Below, in pieces: positions 14,601 to 26,300 of a DNA stretch of 64,000 nucleotides. Below the pieces are notes generated by a model that was not told the origin of the DNA, made no database searches, and worked only from the letters and a program-made list of their open reading frames with translations. A program made the position numbers and the translations under genes. Each line of letters opens with the position of its first letter. The first letter of the stretch is position 1. The DNA comes from Asterias rubens. Lineage: Eukaryota. The stretch covers positions 4,402,001 to 4,466,000 of the forward strand of contig NC_047076.1 in NCBI RefSeq assembly GCF_902459465.1, read 5' to 3'.

Positions 14601-16899
14601 AATCTTACAGTGAGTGTTACCACAACACATTCACTTGTCCTATATCAGCCATTACAGAGGATAGGGATTTAAACCAATCCTCAATGTGACAACAGAAACA
14701 ATTAACACACAGAATAATGAGAATCTTTCCACACAAGTGTACTCCAAGATTGTTATTCAACTCATGCATATTTCCATTCACTCAAACAGTTTCACTTTAT
14801 CCATCTAGGTCTGTCACTCCTATGCTAAAAAAAAAACCAAATTACACTAAATGTTATACTAATTGTTGTAAAAACTTATGATATTTAAGGTATTTACCAT
14901 TAATTTCAAACCTATTTATTTTGTTAAGTTATTGAGCAAGTTTTATGTATGTTGTTTGTTTTGGTTCTGTAATGTTTGATGTTCTGTACTTGTTGATGTT
15001 TGTTTTGGATGTTTGCACCATTTCTTCTCGCATTGACCATTTTAAACTAAAAGTCTCTGTTTTTCATAATATATCAGTTTAATTCAGTTCAGTTCAGTTT
15101 ATTCGAATTTCCACTCAATCCGGTGAATATTGAAGCGAATGTTAAGAGGAACAACAAGGAGGCGGATTATTTATAGTGTCTCTTTCCGGTCTTTGAAATT
15201 CTCCAGCCTGTTGCGAATGTAAAGTTTCCAATCAACACTTTTGTTGAAGTTGAAGAGACGCATTCACACATGGGTCGTGAACTCAGTGTCAACTAGGCAG
15301 GTGTTTCGCACAATAGTTAAAGTTATACAATTTCCATTGTAGTGAGCCTTTTACTACTGCACTAAAGTTTTGTTTAATCGGATTAACTTAAGCTATTTAC
15401 ATGTCTAGACGACTAATGCTTGATGTCATAACACTGACACAGATTGAATTGCTTAAAAATGCACATCTTTTTGGGGTGAATATTGAAGAAGGCTATAATT
15501 TTTTGAGCCGAATTACCACAACACAGGCACGTTTACATGATCATGATGATGTAGTTTTAAAATTAATTCTCAAAAGTCAGGAAGTAATAATGCCTTGGTA
15601 TTTACTATAGTACAAATATACATACATACCCCATTCATCCTGTTTCTCTCGGCATTTTTGTAATTCACTCACATCAGTTTACAACTTGCTTTCAAAACTC
15701 ACCGAAATTGTCCGCCGTGTTACTTTGAGCCTGCACGGCGCGTCCATATAACATTTCACGGTTAGCTGGTTCCGTGAGAAAATACTCCCCTCACTTCCAG
15801 GTGAAATTTTCCCGCAGATAATTGTCCTCTGCTGAGATGAAAAGACACCAGCTCCATCAGCAAACGTTTCCCGGTCAATTAAAGAATAAAACAACACATT
15901 ATGCCCTAATTTGGCCTGAGACAAGGAAATTTGTGAGATTTTTTTCTCATGAATTTCAAATTAAGTCGGCTCTGCATTAAAATTTCACTGATACTGAAAA
16001 AGCGCAACAGGTCCCTTTTGCTTTTTGCTTCCAAGGGGCGGTTCACTGGATGTATATGCTTCCGCAGTCACTTAAAATTTCTTCAAATTTCACCTTTTGT
16101 CCAATAAAACTTATAGAATGCTTGTAAAGTATTCTCAATATGATTTAAGGAGTATACATTTTAGGTTTTTTATTTTTTTTTATTTTGAAGTCTAAAAAAA
16201 TAAACCTGTTTTTCTTGGTGCGAAGGGATACCGACCCCTTTACAACCCACAAGGAAAGTCGTCTGCTAAAATTTTAGGGGACCCGTTTTAGGGCTTGCCA
16301 TTGGTCAACAGTACTGAAAAACCATCTACTGATTGGCTAATTCAGAATGCGTTATGCAAAAATCTTCGTAGTCACATGCTGAACTATTAATAACTACATC
16401 AAAACAACGTTGCTCTTTGCTGGTTGACTGGTTTCCTGCTAATTTGAAAATTAGTAGCAAGTAAGTCGTTTGGTAACCAGGAGAGTGTTGTGTACTAATT
16501 GAGCATGGATGGCTATATGATATCCCATTAGTAGTGCGCTTTCGTTTCAGTAACTTGCTTGGAATTTTCTGGGGCGTTTCTTGTCATGATATTGGATTGG
16601 CCGTACTTTATGAGGAAACTGGCCGCCCAATAATCATGTTTTGAAAATACTAATAACATAATACAGCCGGGTGACAGTCTAGAATCAAATTTTGCGAAAA
16701 GAGAATGTTCGAATTGAAATGAGTGCAGCTAAAACCTCCCCCACCCACATCTACTATCTATACTATTACTATGCTCGTTACCGAGTAAGTTCTTTTAACA
16801 ATTTATTTTGAGTAATAACCGATAGTGTCAACTGCCTTTATAAGGAATAATGTTTTAATCGATTTCGAAAAATAGATTTCCCTGATGAAAAAAGCACAA

Positions 16900-17148
16900 C
16901 AGTGGCAACTGGTAATTCTAATTATTGGAACCCCCCCCCCCCCCCCAACCCGGACCTCCCCTTCCTTTTCAGTCAAATGACGTCATAAAAAAAAAGTTTT
17001 GGAGCTTGATAGAGGGCGCTTTGGAAAAAGAAAAACCCAGCAGTGTGTGAAAAAAAAAACTACACAAACCAGCTGCATAAACTGTTTTCGTGTGTGGATT
17101 TGAAAGTGATTGCCAGGAAAACGAAGACCTTCTACAACAGACGATCAT
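16900..17148 (+). promoter_or_regulatory. Candidate promoter and non-coding exon 1 of the TEX12-like gene
   Basis: TGACGTCA (CRE) 16978-85, CAACTG (MYB-like) 16906-11, TTTGAA (CHR-like) 17099-104; strong donor CAT|GTAAGT after 17148; next good acceptor at 18168. Confidence 0.5.
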
Positions 17149-17231
17149 GTAAGTACAATTAAAAGAATCAGATTTTATATGATTTTAAACAAATAATGTT
17201 GGGGGAAAATGGGCTACGTGCATGTCTCTTA

Positions 17232-17318
17232 CTCCTAGAAATATTTCGGTTTCGTCCGGCTATCCTCTCCCGTGTAACGAGAGACGATAGCCGGACGAAA
17301 CCGAAATAGTTCTGGGAG
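17232..17318. mobile_element. 87-bp hairpin MITE with TA target duplication
   Basis: CTCCTAGAAATATTTCGGTTTCGTCCGGCTATC / GATAGCCGGACGAAACCGAAATAGTTCTGGGAG, flanked by TA on both sides. Confidence 0.8.
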
Positions 17319-18178
17319 TACCTGTCTCTCTAGTGTTTTTATTATTATAGATAGTCAGAATCAGATCAGATGGCTTTTTCGTCTCCGTATTAAAACTTTA
17401 CCAGCTTGCTTGGAATAGAAAGTCCAACTTTTGTATTGTTGTAGCCAACTCTCTGAATCATTCAGAGTATAGTTGCCCGTATGCCCTTTGGCCTGGGATG
17501 CGATATGTCATTACTCAATAATATAGAATTTAAATTAAAGGTGTTTATCAGATCAAAAATCAAAATTATCACTTCTTGTTCTGGTTAAATATTATTGCTA
17601 TTATTTAACACTAAAACCACTGGCCTCAGGCATGTGTGGTGTAAAGTGTGTGGTCCAGTGTAAAATTTGAGGCCTGTTGTATCCTGTAAATGTGGGGCCT
17701 CCTCCTCTGCTGGACAAAATACTTTTGTTTATTTTATTGTCGGGCCTGTAACTAGTGTAAACTCATGACTGAACAAGTCTGGTGGTCTTGTGTTTTTTTA
17801 ATTGAATAACAAAACCTTGCAGTGCAGTGTCACATTTTGAACAAAAACAAACACAAATTAAGTTCAAATGTTGATTTTGAGCATGATAAACAGATTTAAA
17901 AACAATGTATTCCAATAATAAAGACAAAAATGGTAAATCTTCTCTTATTATGCTGTATGTCTTTGTACTTAATTCAAGTAAAAAACAGTATGCATGTTAA
18001 ACCATTTGGTGTTTTCAAAAACAGTTCTGGGCAAGTTAACATTTTGAGCAACAAGCCCTTTGGTCATGTGAACTTTCTCCCAAACCTAGCTCCTTGACCT
18101 AATTTTAACTCTCAAAATTTGCAATCTTTTTTTGATCTGAGCTTTTTCATGTTATTAACTATTTCCAGACTGAATGAG

Positions 18179-19993
18179 ATGATGGAGTCATCAATAGTCA
18201 TGGAAAGCTCAACCATTGATGAGGAAAGTTCAGTCACAGCATCAACTTCTGGAGGAAACGACCCACAAATATTCAACCATTCCATTGAACAGAAGGCCGA
18301 CCCACAAGGCACCTTCAGTTTCGGCTTAAAAGGTAAATGGGCTGATAAATAACTTGTTGAGGTTTACAGACAAGTCTCGAATTCACAAAGCACTAAGATA
18401 TCTTCTTGAAGGGAATTTATACCTTTGGTTTTTCGGGCATACAATTGTTTTTGAATGTTGATTTTAAGTTGTTGATTGTATCTTATGCACTTTTAGTAAG
18501 ATTTTTGAAATAGAATGTAATGGATCAATAATAACTAAACAAAAAAGGAGAGACCACGTCCTATGTATTACTATTACCAACAATAAAAAACAACCGACAC
18601 ACACAAAATAGAAAATATTAACAAGTCAAAATAACTTCAATTTTGTTCTCAGAGGACAACACACCATGCCATGTTGGACTGACAGACAAACACATGGGGA
18701 GTTCTTTAAAAGGTGAGTACCAATAACGATTCTATGATTTAATGATTAAGTGCGACTGATGCAGAAACAAAAAGCAGTTTCAGTTTGAAAGCTCAATGAT
18801 CAGAGATCCAATCCTCTACTGAAGAATATTACTCTGCAAGTCAAGAAAGAATAACAAAGAATAACATGCAGGCCACAGAGGCCTGGTCTTGGCCTTGGTC
18901 AGGTCTTGTGCCTGGTCTTGGCCTAGCTTGGTGCTCCTTCAAAAGTTTCCCTTTGACTTTAAGAAATTCCATTGGAAGTGCCCTTTGCAAAATGACGATG
19001 ACCTTGCCCTTTCGAAGTGAACTTCTAGGCCTGATTTAGAGAGTGATCCCAAAATGCCCAAAACAACTGATTGACACTTAAAATGAATACCTCTTACCAA
19101 GATAAATCGCAGGTGTGAGATTTTTAAGGGAAAACAAGTTTTCTCTTTTGTGCGAGATGCATATTCAACAAATGTTTTTATTTGGTTTATGACTAGCAAT
19201 TGGCCAAGAGATGAAGACTGCATGTCTGGAATGGGAACAAACGATGGTGTAAGTAGAAAACATTGATATGGATTTTATCATAATATACATGTAGTGGCTT
19301 CTTATATAGCGCGCATAACGGTCACTCAGTGCTGCTCAAGGTGCTTTAACACAAAGTATTTTCCTGTGTAGTGTGTTGGACAACGTATCAATTATGAGAC
19401 CTACATAGCTCCATGTATGATTAACAAGGTGCTGTGGCACAATATGCTGCTATTCAAATCAGGAACACCGGGGCGAACCCCTTCTCTTTTAGCAATAAGT
19501 GCACTGGGTTCTTTTACTTGCATTACACAATGCTTGGCATGATACTCACATGAAAATAATACGCGCAATCCCAAGGAAGGATATAACGTACATTCATAGC
19601 TTGCTGGGTTCCATTTCTATAGTGTAGATCTTAAACTTTGCCATTTTCAAAATTGGAGATGCACTGTTGGGTGTTTTTTTTTCAAAAACTCTTTTAGTGC
19701 CAAGGTCATACATGTACGATATAGTTTATGTGTTCCAAAAGTGTCATTTTCAACCATCTACAATCTAAAGTATGCACTGAAGGAGTCCATATAGATTTCC
19801 CATTTAACACTGAATTATTCTTCTTATTGTTCCTAACCAAAGAGAGAGTGAGCAGTTTGAGTTGTTCTGCCCAACCAGAGTTGATAAGTTGCTTCAAGAG
19901 GCGCATGCCATGGAGGAACATCTGCTGCGTCAGAAAGAGGAACTCATCTCACGTCTTAGAAATCTCTCTCAGACCCTACAGGTTATCTCCTAG
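18179..19993 (+). CDS. TEX12: TEX12-like synaptonemal complex central element protein, 138 aa
   Basis: Exons 18179-18332, 18653-18712, 19197-19248, 19843-19993 join in frame (417 nt). C-terminus IGQEMKTACLEWEQTMVESEQFELFCPTRVDKLLQEAHAMEEHLLRQKEELISRLRNLSQTLQVIS aligns without gaps to recalled human TEX12 [64 protein letters not shown]. Confidence 0.8.
18868..19033. mobile_element. Interspersed repeat with CAGGCC...GGCCTG-type ends; copies about 46140-46200, 53579-53725, 61377-61495
   Basis: Shared core GGCCTTGGT..CC.TTCAAAAGTTTC ... AAGTGCCCTTT.CAAA ... CTTGCCCT. Confidence 0.65.
19330..19530 (+). mobile_element. Interspersed repeat fragment; reverse copy about 36580-36720
   Basis: TTATGAGACCTAC ... 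ACAAGGTGCTGTGGCACAA.ATGCT ... CACCGGG ... CACTGGGTTC in both. Confidence 0.6.
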
Positions 19994-20794
19994 AGACCCA
20001 TTTAACTATCTCCTCACTACTCATTTCTAATTCTGAGTCAACTACATGAAAAAAATGACGTCTGAAACAGTTAGGACCGGCTGGAAGTGCTAGAAGTCAA
20101 AATGTTGCAGTCGTTTGAAACGACTCTGGAGCGCCTTGGTTTCCAACGTCTTTATTGTCATGAACCGAGCATGTTTACATGAAAATGTTATGTTAAGTTC
20201 GCCTGTCTGAATCTAAAATGTAATCGGTCCAACCTAGAGTCACTCCTTGGTTCGGCGCCACTGTTGCGCGCCTCTCTGACCCAGGTGTTAGAGGGGCCAT
20301 TTCAGTGCCTATCAGTCACCACCTCATACTGTTTTATTGGTAAAATTTTACATTATGATTTTCTGAAATGTATCTTGAACATTCACACAAAATACCACAC
20401 AATCTTCTCAGTCAAACATCCATTGTTGTTTTCTCTTTCTTTATTCTTTGTGATACAAATAATTCTCTTGCATTTTTTGATAATACTTTTGAGTGTTCGA
20501 ACCTCTTATAGATAAATACAAACTTGTATTTTATAATTCTGTTGATAAAACATTTTCAGACTCTTGTTTAGAAAGTTAAATAATCTTTATTTATTTATAA
20601 GACAATAGAATGTAGAGGTTGGAAGTTCCTTTGGAAATAAAAGAAAATGTCGCCGAAGAATGATTTACAAATGAAGCTTGGGAAGAACTAAATGTATTAT
20701 AAAACCCCATACTTGTATTCTGCCTTATGATTAGTTTACAGTGCATCACATGATATGTCTTAATTTTACAAGAATGCCGTGCAAGCATTGCACG

Positions 20795-21015
20795 ATACCC
20801 ATATCAACCAACTGTCTATACCCATAGCAACCAATTTTCTAAATAGTAATCAATATACCTTTTACTGATATCAACCAATTCACTATTCCCACAGCAACCA
20901 ATCATACCCATAGAAACCACCGTTCTATAACTAAAGAAACCAATGAACTATAACTATGGCAACTAATGCACTATACACATAGCAACCACTGTACTACATG
21001 TATATCCGTAGCAAA
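20795..21015. repeat. Degenerate minisatellite of CCCATAGCAACC-like units, about 9 copies
   Basis: Units near 20799, 20821, 20868, 20888, 20907, 20931, 20954, 20978, 21006. Confidence 0.7.
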
Positions 21016-23364: not shown

Positions 23365-26300
23365 TCACCACCATTTTTCACAATGAATTTGGTCTTCTCT
23401 GATGCCACATTCTTCTAAGTGTGTCTCAATGTCTGCTATCATGGGTGGTGGCCCACAGATGAAGCAACGAAGGTTCTCCTTGTCCAGTCTCTGTATTGCA
23501 GTTGCTATTGCTTCGGAGTCGATGCGTTTATCTGGAGCAAGAAAGTTTGAAAAAAATATGTACTGCTCAAATCAAGAGAACTGAACTACAAAGACAATGA
23601 TAATATTAATGTGCGTTCATCACTGTTTCCTTGAAGAGATACCTCTTAAAAAAGTCAGTGTTTTTACACGCTTTGGACATTATCATTGACATCAACATTT
23701 CCCGAAGGCTGAAATCATAAAATGTTACAGTTTAGTAATTACACTAATTAGCACAAAAACAATTTACAGTTAACAGTTTTCACGAACAGTTACATGGCAA
23801 TGTGCAATTTTTTACATCAAAGGACATATATGTACATGTAGCGCTTGCACAATCCCCAAACCAAATACTCTACATTAAGAGTTTTCACAAAGAGACACTT
23901 TGTGTGAGCTACATGTAGATACAATTAAGTTTTCACAGACACTTTCGTACATTGGTTTGTAAACAGTATAAAGTATTAATATATTATTATAAAAATGGCA
24001 AACAGTGTCCAAAACAATGACTTCAAAAATAGTTTTTACTTCACACGCAGTTTTCTCCAATTGTATCAATAAATATGAAATTGGGCCCAGATTAAAATAA
24101 ACTTACCTGATATGTGGGTAGATGGTGTAATCTTCTCTTTTGTGACAAAGAAGTGGCAGTTGATGTCCTCTGCCCCGGAAGCAATGGCCTCAATTGACTC
24201 CTGACAACCACATTCGAAAAATAATACTTTAATAATGCTATATACATGTATGCAATTAAACATGCCAACTTAACAGTACACTGAATCACAGTACTAGGAA
24301 AACTAACGCAACAAAAGTGAGCTGTCAGATGGTACTATTTCTCTGGAGGATTGGTTCTGGTATGAGGGGTCATAATCAGACTTGGGGGGGGGGGGGTCAT
24401 AATCATTAATCCTGTACTCTTCCTAGTCAGCTTGGGCGATACCATGATATTATCGAATATCGTGATACTAATTTGGAAACGATTTTGATATCGGATCGAT
24501 TTGGTTTTAATCGAAATATTGATAAATCGCAATATCGATCAAGTATCGCAATGTATTTCCTAGCCGAGACATCTTGCACCCCAATAGGTTTCGAGTAAAA
24601 CCTGAAGAATAGGTCATTAGAACACCTCTCTTATGCTATGTCTGTCTCTTCTACAACTTTCACTGGGAGTTTGAAGACTGATGATGTCAAATTTAATTAA
24701 TCGCGATTATATCGAATATCACGATATTGTAAATGATATATCGGGGAAAAAAATAAATCGATATCGTCAAGCTTACTTCCTAGTACCTACCTTGAAAATA
24801 AGTTCCTTCATACTAGAGGCACTATAAAGAAGCTCTACTTTCCCTGGTTTATAAGCCGTTGGGTCATTCATCCTCTCTTGATGTAAATCTCTGACCTGCT
24901 GAAGGATGGAGTACATTGGGTTGATGCCAATACCTCCTGCTAAGAGTAGAACATCCCAACTAGGATCTCCAGGTGAGGGGTCATAGTTTATCTGATCGCC
25001 ACCGACACGAACGCCAACTACGTCTCCCACTTCGCACTGAAAACACAAATACATTCACTCTTACGTCCGGTTCAGACCTTGATCCAACTTCATAGAGCTG
25101 CTTAAGCACAAAAAGTAGCTAAGCACAACAACATGCTTACCAAAATAAGTATACATGTGACTGGTATCCTGCTCATGTTTGCTTAGCAGAACAATGTTTT
25201 AAAAGCAATATTTTCTGCTTTAAAAAAGCAGCTCTACGAAACTGGGCCCTGAGCATTACTTTGTTTGCAAAATAAATAGCGACCCTCTAACTATTATAAG
25301 TTTTCTACTCTACAGGCCAAATAATAAAAATCATAATGCAGAGACATGGGAAGGAACTCGGGTCTCTAATTAAAACGGACAAGCATAAACCAAAATACAA
25401 ACGATGCAAAAAAGCCAACGATGCAAAAAAGCCATTATAATGTTGTCTAAAATATAAAGTGACTTCCTGTACTTGTTTTAATCCTCCAATAGACCCTCAC
25501 AACGCACAGCGCACATACACACGCATCTCCTGTTCGCCATTTTGTGTGCCAAAACATGTACAAAAGGAATGGACTCCCCCAAAAAGGCAGAAATTGTAGA
25601 CTCGCATTGCTTGGAGGTGTGTGAACATGTATACTCACATTGTATGCACATTTTGACAAACACAAAATGGCTGACAAGAGACACCCGTGTATTTTCGCTG
25701 CGCAGTGAGCAAAGGGTCTACATGTATTACCAAATTACTGTACAAAATACAGAAGAGGTCATCACACAAAGCACAGCACAGCAAATGAAAAGACTTAATT
25801 TAAAGGTCACCCAAGGCATAGCTGGCTACACACACAGAGGCTGGCAATACACAAGTTTACAAAATATCCGATCCAAATGCAGCTCTACACATCACAATAT
25901 TTCTCTTAAATGTATTTAGATGATTTTACAAAAAGGAATACATGTACTCACAGAGAGTACTGGGACACTTTTTTTCCCTAATGACTAGTATTTGGAACAC
26001 GGGGGGATCCATGCTCCCCTCAAAATGGAAAGAAATACCAAAACAAAACTAAATGTGCTCTCTCATGCTCAAAGCTACAGAAGAAAAAGTGTGAGTTTAC
26101 CTGTTTACAGGTCGCGACCCCAAAGTTAACTTTTCATTATGAATGATGTAAATCACAAAGTTGAATTGACAGTTGAAAACTGAGGACGCACTTGTGCTCC
26201 CTACAATAATAACAGACATTTGTAGTGCGCCATGTCTGTCAGAAAGACACTCTGCTAATGTCGGTGCTTAAAGCCCAAGACTGAATGAAATTTCAAGTTA

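What the first reader, a model, noticed from the sequence alone, without database searches (positions are those of the whole stretch)
18179..19993. Hidden TEX12-like synaptonemal-complex gene absent from the ORF track
Seen: four short exons join in frame to 138 aa, with a Ser/acidic N-terminus and an amphipathic helical C-terminus. The last 64-66 residues align gap-free to recalled human TEX12 (D-x-L-x-x-EA-x-A-x-E-x-x-L...E-x-L-x-x-R...TL). Known: TEX12 pairs with SYCE2 in the SC central element and diverges fast, so invertebrate orthologues are easily missed. The orthology call is inference from a remembered alignment.
Basis: partly seen in the sequence, partly recalled or inferred. Interest (0 to 1): 0.72.

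Follow-up and report, generated by a model that had tools for sequence, protein, structure and literature searches.

The report
Starfish TEX12 synaptonemal-complex gene
This is a real, spliced and transcribed starfish gene, listed in RefSeq only as "uncharacterized", that is the orthologue of vertebrate TEX12, a small protein of the scaffold that zips paired chromosomes together in meiosis. It fills an annotation gap and is not a new kind of gene.

Summary
The four exons 18179-18332, 18653-18712, 19197-19248 and 19843-19993 (+) have GT..AG borders and join in frame to 138 aa. That protein is letter for letter RefSeq XP_033640044.1, "uncharacterized protein LOC117300378" of Asterias rubens. Spliced RNA contigs carry all three junctions in three runs from two studies. 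A run from a third study carries the last junction.

The TEX12 reading is supported:
- A profile of 23 invertebrate relatives hits human TEX12 in the PDB at E 2e-10; the next best hit is 0.29.
- hhalign against 13 mammalian TEX12 gives 96.9 % probability and E 1.4e-10 over 74 gap-free columns. Reversed and shuffled controls give 0.4 % or less.
- The last two introns sit at the same codon and phase in starfish, amphioxus, acorn worm, scallop, sea anemone and hamster TEX12. All seven species share a 52-nt exon.
- The gene is single copy, and the genome holds no better TEX12 candidate.

Caveats:
- Pfam's TEX12 model does not hit this protein on its own.
- The tissue of expression is unknown.
- SYCE2 binding was not tested.
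- The gene is "hidden" only from an ORF track.

TEX12 is already known to be ancient in animals, so this is a new member of a known kind. The scan noted this same stretch once more (s1-150575), not on other DNA.

The parts
17037..17148 (+). Non-coding 5' exon. Its 5' end is not defined, because the contig starts at 17037. The donor GT follows 17148.
   Evidence: In one search a contig of run X8 (depth 5.4, this run only) joins 17148 to 18169, skipping 1020 bases with GT..AG ends. In one search the leader has in-frame stops and no in-frame ATG upstream of 18179.
18169..18332 (+). Exon holding the start codon (ATG at 18179). It encodes residues 1-51 plus one base of codon 52, the Ser/acidic disordered N-terminus.
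18653..18712 (+). 60-nt coding exon, residues 52-71 plus one base of codon 72. The intron after it is phase 1.
   Evidence: The junctions 18332/18653 and 18712/19197 stand in spliced contigs of X8, X9 and X10.
19197..19248 (+). 52-nt coding exon, the start of the TEX12 helical core (residues 72-89). An exon of the same length is present in all seven species compared, hamster TEX12 included.
19843..19993 (+). Coding part of the last exon. It encodes residues 89-138, the hinge motif and the C-terminal tip heptad (L123, L127, L130, L134), and ends in the stop TAG.
   Evidence: The junction 19248/19843 stands in X8, X9, X10 and X11.
19994..20900 (+). 3' untranslated part of the last exon. It continues beyond 20900, which was the end of the stretch laid.
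   Evidence: In one search contigs of X8 and X9 lie unbroken on 19843-20900 and run about 100 letters further.

Best explanation
The locus is the single-copy TEX12 orthologue of the starfish Asterias rubens (RefSeq LOC117300378, unnamed). It has at least five exons, four of them coding, and makes a 138-aa protein. The first roughly 57 residues are disordered. Residues about 60-137 form an amphipathic helix that corresponds to the structural core of human TEX12 (residues 49-123). What follows is inferred by homology and was not shown here. In meiotic prophase the helical core would wrap around a SYCE2 dimer to form the rod-like building block of the synaptonemal-complex central element. The conserved heptad leucines of the C-terminal tip (L123, L127, L130, L134, which match human L110, F114, I117, L121) would tie such blocks together into longer assemblies.
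For: Gene model and transcription:
- The model is exact and matches RefSeq.
- Spliced RNA contigs carry all three junctions in runs X8 and X9 (one study) and X10 (a second study). X11 (a third study) carries the last junction.

Homology to TEX12:
- The last exon alone has 49 relatives at E 1e-3 or better among 1.84 billion proteins. They come from echinoderms, Ptychodera, Branchiostoma, Nematostella, Exaiptasia and molluscs.
- Two relatives are already named 'testis-expressed sequence 12 protein' by their depositors: Mytilus galloprovincialis and Desmophyllum pertusum.
- In the PDB the best hit is human TEX12: E 0.017 for exon 4 alone, E 0.036 for the whole protein and E 2e-10 for the family profile, next best 0.29.
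- hhalign against mammalian TEX12 gives 96.9 % and E 1.4e-10 over 74 gap-free columns. Reversed and column-shuffled templates give 0.4 % or less.
- PF15219 is the only Pfam family hit repeatedly, in 9 of 23 family members, best E 6.9e-4.
- The top Atlas clusters carry TEX12, score 0.95.

Gene structure and copy number:
- The last two introns lie at codon -31 (phase 1) and codon -14 (phase 2) from the invariant Asp in all seven species compared. All seven also have the 52-nt exon.
- The gene is single copy, and a six-frame scan of the genome with PF15219 finds no other candidate.

Protein features and selection:
- The AlphaFold2 architecture is a disordered N-terminus followed by one confident helix.
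- The tip heptad residues are conserved. Their role in human TEX12 is taken from PMC9452514.
- pN/pS is 0.26 between A. rubens and A. amurensis, and exons are more conserved than introns.

Partner:
- TEX12 and SYCE2 of a sea anemone interact in yeast two-hybrid (bioRxiv 10.64898/2026.01.18.699972).
- A SYCE2-like protein is annotated in a sea urchin (PMC4132317).
Against: - The Pfam TEX12 model gives no hit for this protein, and no family member reaches the curated cut-off of 27 bits.
- The six-frame genome scan with PF15219 did not pick up this locus.
- Single-sequence similarity to human TEX12 is weak: 17-19 bits, and hhalign gives 33 %.
- The solvent-exposed residues that human TEX12 needs for fibre growth (F102, F109, V116) are H115, E122 and N129 here. 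The human hinge pair R78-D82 is S91-E95.
- The tissue of the RNA runs is coded, so meiotic or gonad expression is not shown.
- The starfish SYCE2 could not be retrieved, so no partner test was run.
Confidence: 0.85

Rival explanations
1. It is a TEX12-derived gene whose main role in starfish lies outside the synaptonemal complex. One such role would be at centrosomes, where mammalian TEX12 also goes without SYCE2. Another would be a central element built in a different way.
For: The FFV surface residues and the R78-D82 hinge pair of human TEX12 are not conserved. The asteroid N-terminus lacks the basic K-R-x-R motif seen in hamster, amphioxus and scallop. The tissue of expression is unknown. 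A SYCE2-independent centrosome role for TEX12 is reported in PMC8654964 (listed, abstract only read).
Against: The gene is single copy with no other TEX12 candidate, so the ancestral role should rest on it. The tip heptad residues and the core are under purifying selection. SYCE2 exists in echinoderms (PMC4132317). The FFV positions also vary among mammals.
Confidence: 0.1
2. It is an unrelated short coiled-coil protein whose likeness to TEX12 comes from amphipathic-helix composition.
For: Single-sequence scores are marginal. Pfam TEX12 is below its cut-off.
Against: Among 177,635 PDB sequences, which include many coiled coils, only TEX12 is significant, at E 2e-10 against 0.29 for the next. 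Reversed and shuffled profiles score 9-14 against 65 for the real one. Two introns coincide in codon and phase with hamster TEX12, which composition cannot produce.
Confidence: 0.03
3. It is a gene-prediction artefact or a decaying pseudogene.
For: The exons are short, and RefSeq gives no name.
Against: Spliced RNA contigs come from three studies. The reading frame is intact and collinear in A. amurensis and Patiria miniata. pN/pS is 0.26.
Confidence: 0.01

Closest known systems
Human and mouse TEX12 (123 aa; PDB 6HK8, 6HK9, 6R17; Pfam PF15219)
   Same: Both are short proteins with a disordered N-terminus and one C-terminal helical core that ends at the C-terminus. They give a 74-column gap-free profile alignment. 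The invariant residues D, A, E, L, L, R, T and L are shared, as are the tip heptad positions. The last two introns and the 52-nt exon are the same.
   Different: Identity over the core is about 20 %, below the Pfam cut-off. The FFV surface residues are polar in the starfish. The hinge region carries the invertebrate motif S-E-x-F-E-x-F-C-P-x-R, with a proline, where mammals have [11 protein letters not shown]. The asteroid N-terminus lacks the basic K-R-x-R motif.
Cnidarian TEX12: Hydra (Fraune et al. 2013, as summarised in PMC4132317) and Nematostella (bioRxiv 10.64898/2026.01.18.699972)
   Same: It belongs to the same invertebrate family. Nematostella LOC116614542 is a significant hit of exon 4 and has the same two introns and the 52-nt and 151-nt exons. 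The preprint reports a SYCE2-TEX12 yeast two-hybrid interaction.
   Different: I could not confirm that LOC116614542 is the exact protein used in the preprint. The cnidarian proteins are longer (172 aa) and have other N-terminal exons.
Mytilus galloprovincialis and Desmophyllum pertusum 'testis-expressed sequence 12 protein'
   Same: They are the only invertebrate relatives in the hit lists that their depositors already named TEX12. They share the same C-terminal core.
   Different: They are 167-211 aa long. The mollusc proteins carry the N-terminal K-K-R-K / D-G-F / T-P-D-I-P motif that asteroids lack.

Membership tests
TEX12 (synaptonemal complex central element) | Detectable homology to the TEX12 structural core (human residues 49-123) | tested here: met
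   The family profile hits PDB TEX12 at E 2e-10, next best 0.29. hhalign gives 96.9 % and E 1.4e-10 over 74 gap-free columns. Controls give 0.4 % or less. Atlas neighbours carry TEX12.
TEX12 (synaptonemal complex central element) | Passes the curated cut-off of Pfam PF15219 (27 bits) | tested here: not met
   P0050 has no hit. Nine of 23 relatives hit weakly, best E 6.9e-4, all under the cut-off. My inference is that this measures the reach of the Pfam model rather than a biological feature: every PF15219-annotated protein retrieved here was mammalian.
TEX12 (synaptonemal complex central element) | Small protein with an unstructured N-terminus and an alpha-helical core reaching the C-terminus | tested here: met
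   The AlphaFold2 model has residues 1-57 at pLDDT under 50 and one helix at 60-137, mostly above 90.
TEX12 (synaptonemal complex central element) | Hydrophobic heptad residues of the C-terminal tip (human L110, F114, I117, L121), which drive assembly (PMC9452514) | tested here: met
   They correspond to L123, L127, L130 and L134, each kept in 20-22 of 23 family members.
TEX12 (synaptonemal complex central element) | Solvent-exposed F102, F109 and V116, needed for fibre growth in human SYCE2-TEX12 (PMC9452514) | tested here: not met
   They correspond to H115, E122 and N129, and these positions vary across the invertebrate family. They also vary among the 13 mammals: F109 is S, L or H in 5, and V116 is M or A in 4.
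TEX12 (synaptonemal complex central element) | Gene structure shared with vertebrate TEX12 | tested here: met
   In Asterias, Patiria, Branchiostoma, Ptychodera, Ylistrum, Nematostella and hamster TEX12 the last two introns lie at codon -31 phase 1 and codon -14 phase 2 from the invariant Asp. All have the 52-nt exon.
TEX12 (synaptonemal complex central element) | It is the only or best TEX12 candidate in its genome | tested here: met
   A six-frame search with P0050 finds only the four exons of this locus. PF15219 finds nothing else of note, best E 6.
TEX12 (synaptonemal complex central element) | Binds SYCE2 | not testable with these tools
   No starfish SYCE2 sequence could be obtained.
TEX12 (synaptonemal complex central element) | Expression in meiotic germ cells | tested here: inconclusive
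   The spliced transcript is present in 3-4 runs, but run identities and tissues are coded.

The most novel reading that the evidence does not exclude
Invertebrate TEX12, and the starfish protein in particular, may build the central-element backbone in a different way from mammals. It keeps the tip heptad but lacks the surface FFV residues that human SYCE2-TEX12 needs to grow fibres. It carries an invariant proline-containing hinge motif (S-E-x-F-E-x-F-C-P-x-R) that mammals lost. Asteroids have also dropped the N-terminal basic motif kept from molluscs to mammals.
Probability: 0.2. Interest if true: 0.45.

Novelty: new member of a known kind. Interest (0 to 1): 0.3.

Why it matters
Synaptonemal-complex proteins diverge so fast that their orthologues often go unnamed. 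Here the whole TEX12 family of echinoderms, hemichordates, amphioxus, cnidarians and most molluscs sits in RefSeq as "uncharacterized", because the Pfam model falls just short. A 2014 proteome survey (PMC4132317) found SYCE2 but no TEX12 in echinoderms.

Naming this gene gives starfish and sea urchins, which are classic systems for meiosis and oocyte maturation, another of the vertebrate-type central-element proteins. The conserved intron pair and the 52-nt exon also give a simple, sequence-independent marker for finding TEX12 in other phyla. This is a useful annotation fix, not a surprise: TEX12 was already held to be ancient in Metazoa.

Tried and rejected
- **Pfam on the exons and on the whole protein.** No TEX12 hit.
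- **Six-frame scan of the genome with PF15219.** It gave only a chance hit on another contig (E 6) and missed this locus.
- **Complex prediction, two copies of the core (residues 58-138).** The verdict was 'no answer', score 0.01. This counts neither for nor against self-association.
- **Fold search.** Not run, because the model is a single long helix and such matches carry no information.
- **Word-based protein search with P0029, residues 105-158.** I used it to test whether some short hits were fish TEX12. They proved to be stony-coral proteins.
- **Starfish SYCE2.** Not obtainable: there is no family model that I know of, and the searches were capped.
- **Fraune et al. 2013 (PMC3813864).** Not held, so I cannot say whether an echinoderm TEX12 was listed there.
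- **tRNA scan of the introns.** Nothing found.
- **AATAAA at 20636.** It is not the only transcript end, because contigs run past 20900.

Full report
**What is in the sequence**

The region 18179-19993 (+) holds four short open stretches with canonical borders. Joined as 18179-18332, 18653-18712, 19197-19248 and 19843-19993 they give 417 nt, which is 138 codons plus TAG. An exact spliced mapper that I wrote finds this single solution when the protein is laid on 17000-21000. No N runs occur in the window.

**It is a public gene model and it is transcribed**

An exhaustive phmmer search with the last exon alone (49 aa) returned a 138-aa protein. Its cluster contains P0050, which is RefSeq XP_033640044.1, "uncharacterized protein LOC117300378 [Asterias rubens]". 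P0050 equals my spliced translation at every residue. The genome size of 417.6 Mb fits that species.

Logan contigs of four public runs were laid on 15000-20900.
- Contigs of X8 and X9 (one study) and X10 (a second study) skip exactly the three introns, with GT..AG ends.
- X11 (a third study) carries the last junction.
- A contig of X8 joins 17148 to 18169, also GT..AG. It reveals a non-coding 5' exon.
- The leader has in-frame stops, so ATG 18179 is the start.
- The last exon continues unspliced beyond 20900.

The runs are coded, so the tissue is unknown.

**Is it TEX12?**

On its own the protein is marginal.
- Pfam PF15219 gives nothing.
- phmmer against the PDB gives human TEX12 (6hk9) as best hit at E 0.017 for exon 4 and E 0.036 for the whole protein.

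The family-level evidence is clear.
- Exon 4 has 49 relatives at E 1e-3 or better among 1.84 billion representatives. They come from starfish, sea cucumbers, sea urchin, brittle star, acorn worm, amphioxus, sea anemones, corals and molluscs.
- Nearly all are "uncharacterized". Two are named "testis-expressed sequence 12 protein" by their depositors.
- A profile of 23 full-length members (A1) hits human TEX12 in the PDB at E 2e-10 over 73 residues. The next best hit of 177,635 sequences is 0.29.
- Against an alignment of 13 mammalian TEX12 (A3), hhalign gives probability 96.9 % and E 1.4e-10. The 74 gap-free columns align starfish 64-137 with human 51-123, so both end at the C-terminus.
- A reversed template and column-shuffled templates score 9-14 against 65 for the real one, with probability 0.4 % or less. 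Coiled-coil composition therefore does not explain the match.
- PF15219 is the only Pfam family hit repeatedly by family members: 9 of 23, best E 6.9e-4, all below the cut-off.
- The three nearest ESM-Atlas clusters carry TEX12, score 0.95.

**Gene structure as independent evidence**

I fetched the genomic loci of six relatives and mapped their proteins exactly.
- In Asterias, Patiria, Branchiostoma, Ptychodera, the scallop Ylistrum, Nematostella and hamster TEX12, the penultimate coding exon is 52 nt.
- The last two introns lie in codon -31 (phase 1) and codon -14 (phase 2), counted from the invariant Asp (starfish D103, human D90).
- The last coding exon is 151 nt in six species when the scallop (148 nt) and hamster (145 nt) are set apart.
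- Two exact coincidences within about 220 nt are very unlikely by chance (inference). They do not depend on residue similarity.

**Copy number and constraint**

A six-frame search of the whole genome with P0050 finds only the four exons of this locus. PF15219 finds no other candidate.

Between A. rubens and A. amurensis the coding sequence has 8 synonymous and 8 non-synonymous differences.
- pN/pS is 0.26 overall and about 0.16 in the core.
- The introns are 80-91 % identical, against about 96 % for the exons.

**Structure and mechanism**

AlphaFold2 with A1 gives a disordered region at 1-57 and one confident helix at 60-137. This matches the description of human TEX12: an unstructured N-terminus and a helical core at 49-123 that binds an SYCE2 dimer as a 2:2 rod. 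The C-terminal tip (114-123) then drives 4:4 and fibre assembly (PMC9452514).

Using the gap-free alignment:
- The tip heptad residues L110, F114, I117 and L121 correspond to L123, L127, L130 and L134. Each is kept in 20-22 of 23 family members.
- Also shared are D90/D103, A96/A109, E100/E113, L103/L116, R113/R126 and T120/T133.
- Not shared are the surface residues F102, F109 and V116 (here H115, E122, N129) and the hinge arginine R78 (here S91). The acidic partner D82 is E95.
- Invertebrates instead have a nearly invariant S-E-x-F-E-x-F-C-P-x-R motif at the hinge.

The SC role and SYCE2 binding are inferred. Support from outside this window comes from two sources. One is the yeast two-hybrid interaction of Nematostella SYCE2 and TEX12 (bioRxiv 10.64898/2026.01.18.699972). 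The other is the annotated SYCE2-like protein of a sea urchin (PMC4132317). A homodimer prediction gave no answer.

**Novelty**

TEX12 and SYCE2 are already held to be conserved across Metazoa (Fraune et al. 2013, as summarised in PMC4132317). In the library I could search, no paper names an echinoderm TEX12. The 2014 survey found SYCE2 but no TEX12 in echinoderm proteomes. I could not read Fraune et al. 2013 itself.

The finding is therefore a correct orthology call that fills an annotation gap. It is a new member of a known kind, of modest interest.

Noticed in passing
window 19285-19540 (intron 3 of the gene): A dispersed repeat of about 240 bp. The first look found 2,607 candidate copies in the genome, and the 39 scored copies elsewhere are 78-82 % identical. 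RNA contigs pile up on it (summed depth up to about 19,000), and contigs from many other loci end here. No tRNA-like part was found by ARAGORN. It is probably a SINE-like element.
   Followed up: partly
window 18940-19136 (intron 2): A second stretch with very high summed contig depth (540-4,800) and loose ends. It is presumably another repeat and was not characterised.
   Followed up: no
P0012/P0056 (Lytechinus), P0004/P0053 (Holothuria), P0005/P0055 (Apostichopus): The sea urchin and both sea cucumbers each have two near-identical TEX12-like gene entries on the same contig. Asterias has one copy. These could be recent tandem duplicates or assembly haplotigs.
   Followed up: no
L002, L003, L006, L007 against the window: An N-terminal motif is shared by several distant species. 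A basic motif (K-R-x-R or K-K-R-K) is followed by a phase-0 intron and a P-D-[IS]-[PS]-like motif in hamster TEX12, amphioxus and scallop. The acorn worm has the phase-0 intron and a D-G-F motif. Asterias and Patiria lack the motif, and their first coding intron is phase 1. Asteroid TEX12 appears to have lost or replaced this N-terminal module.
   Followed up: partly
window 24773-25054 (-): A 93-aa open frame whose sequence looks to me like an exon of an FAD/NAD-binding oxidoreductase of a neighbouring gene on the other strand. It was not tested.
   Followed up: no
Atlas cluster 3: One of the three nearest Atlas clusters carries Pfam TEX12 in 26 % of its members, but its commonest phylum is given as Streptophyta. 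This is odd for an animal SC protein. It may be a labelling or contamination artefact.
   Followed up: no
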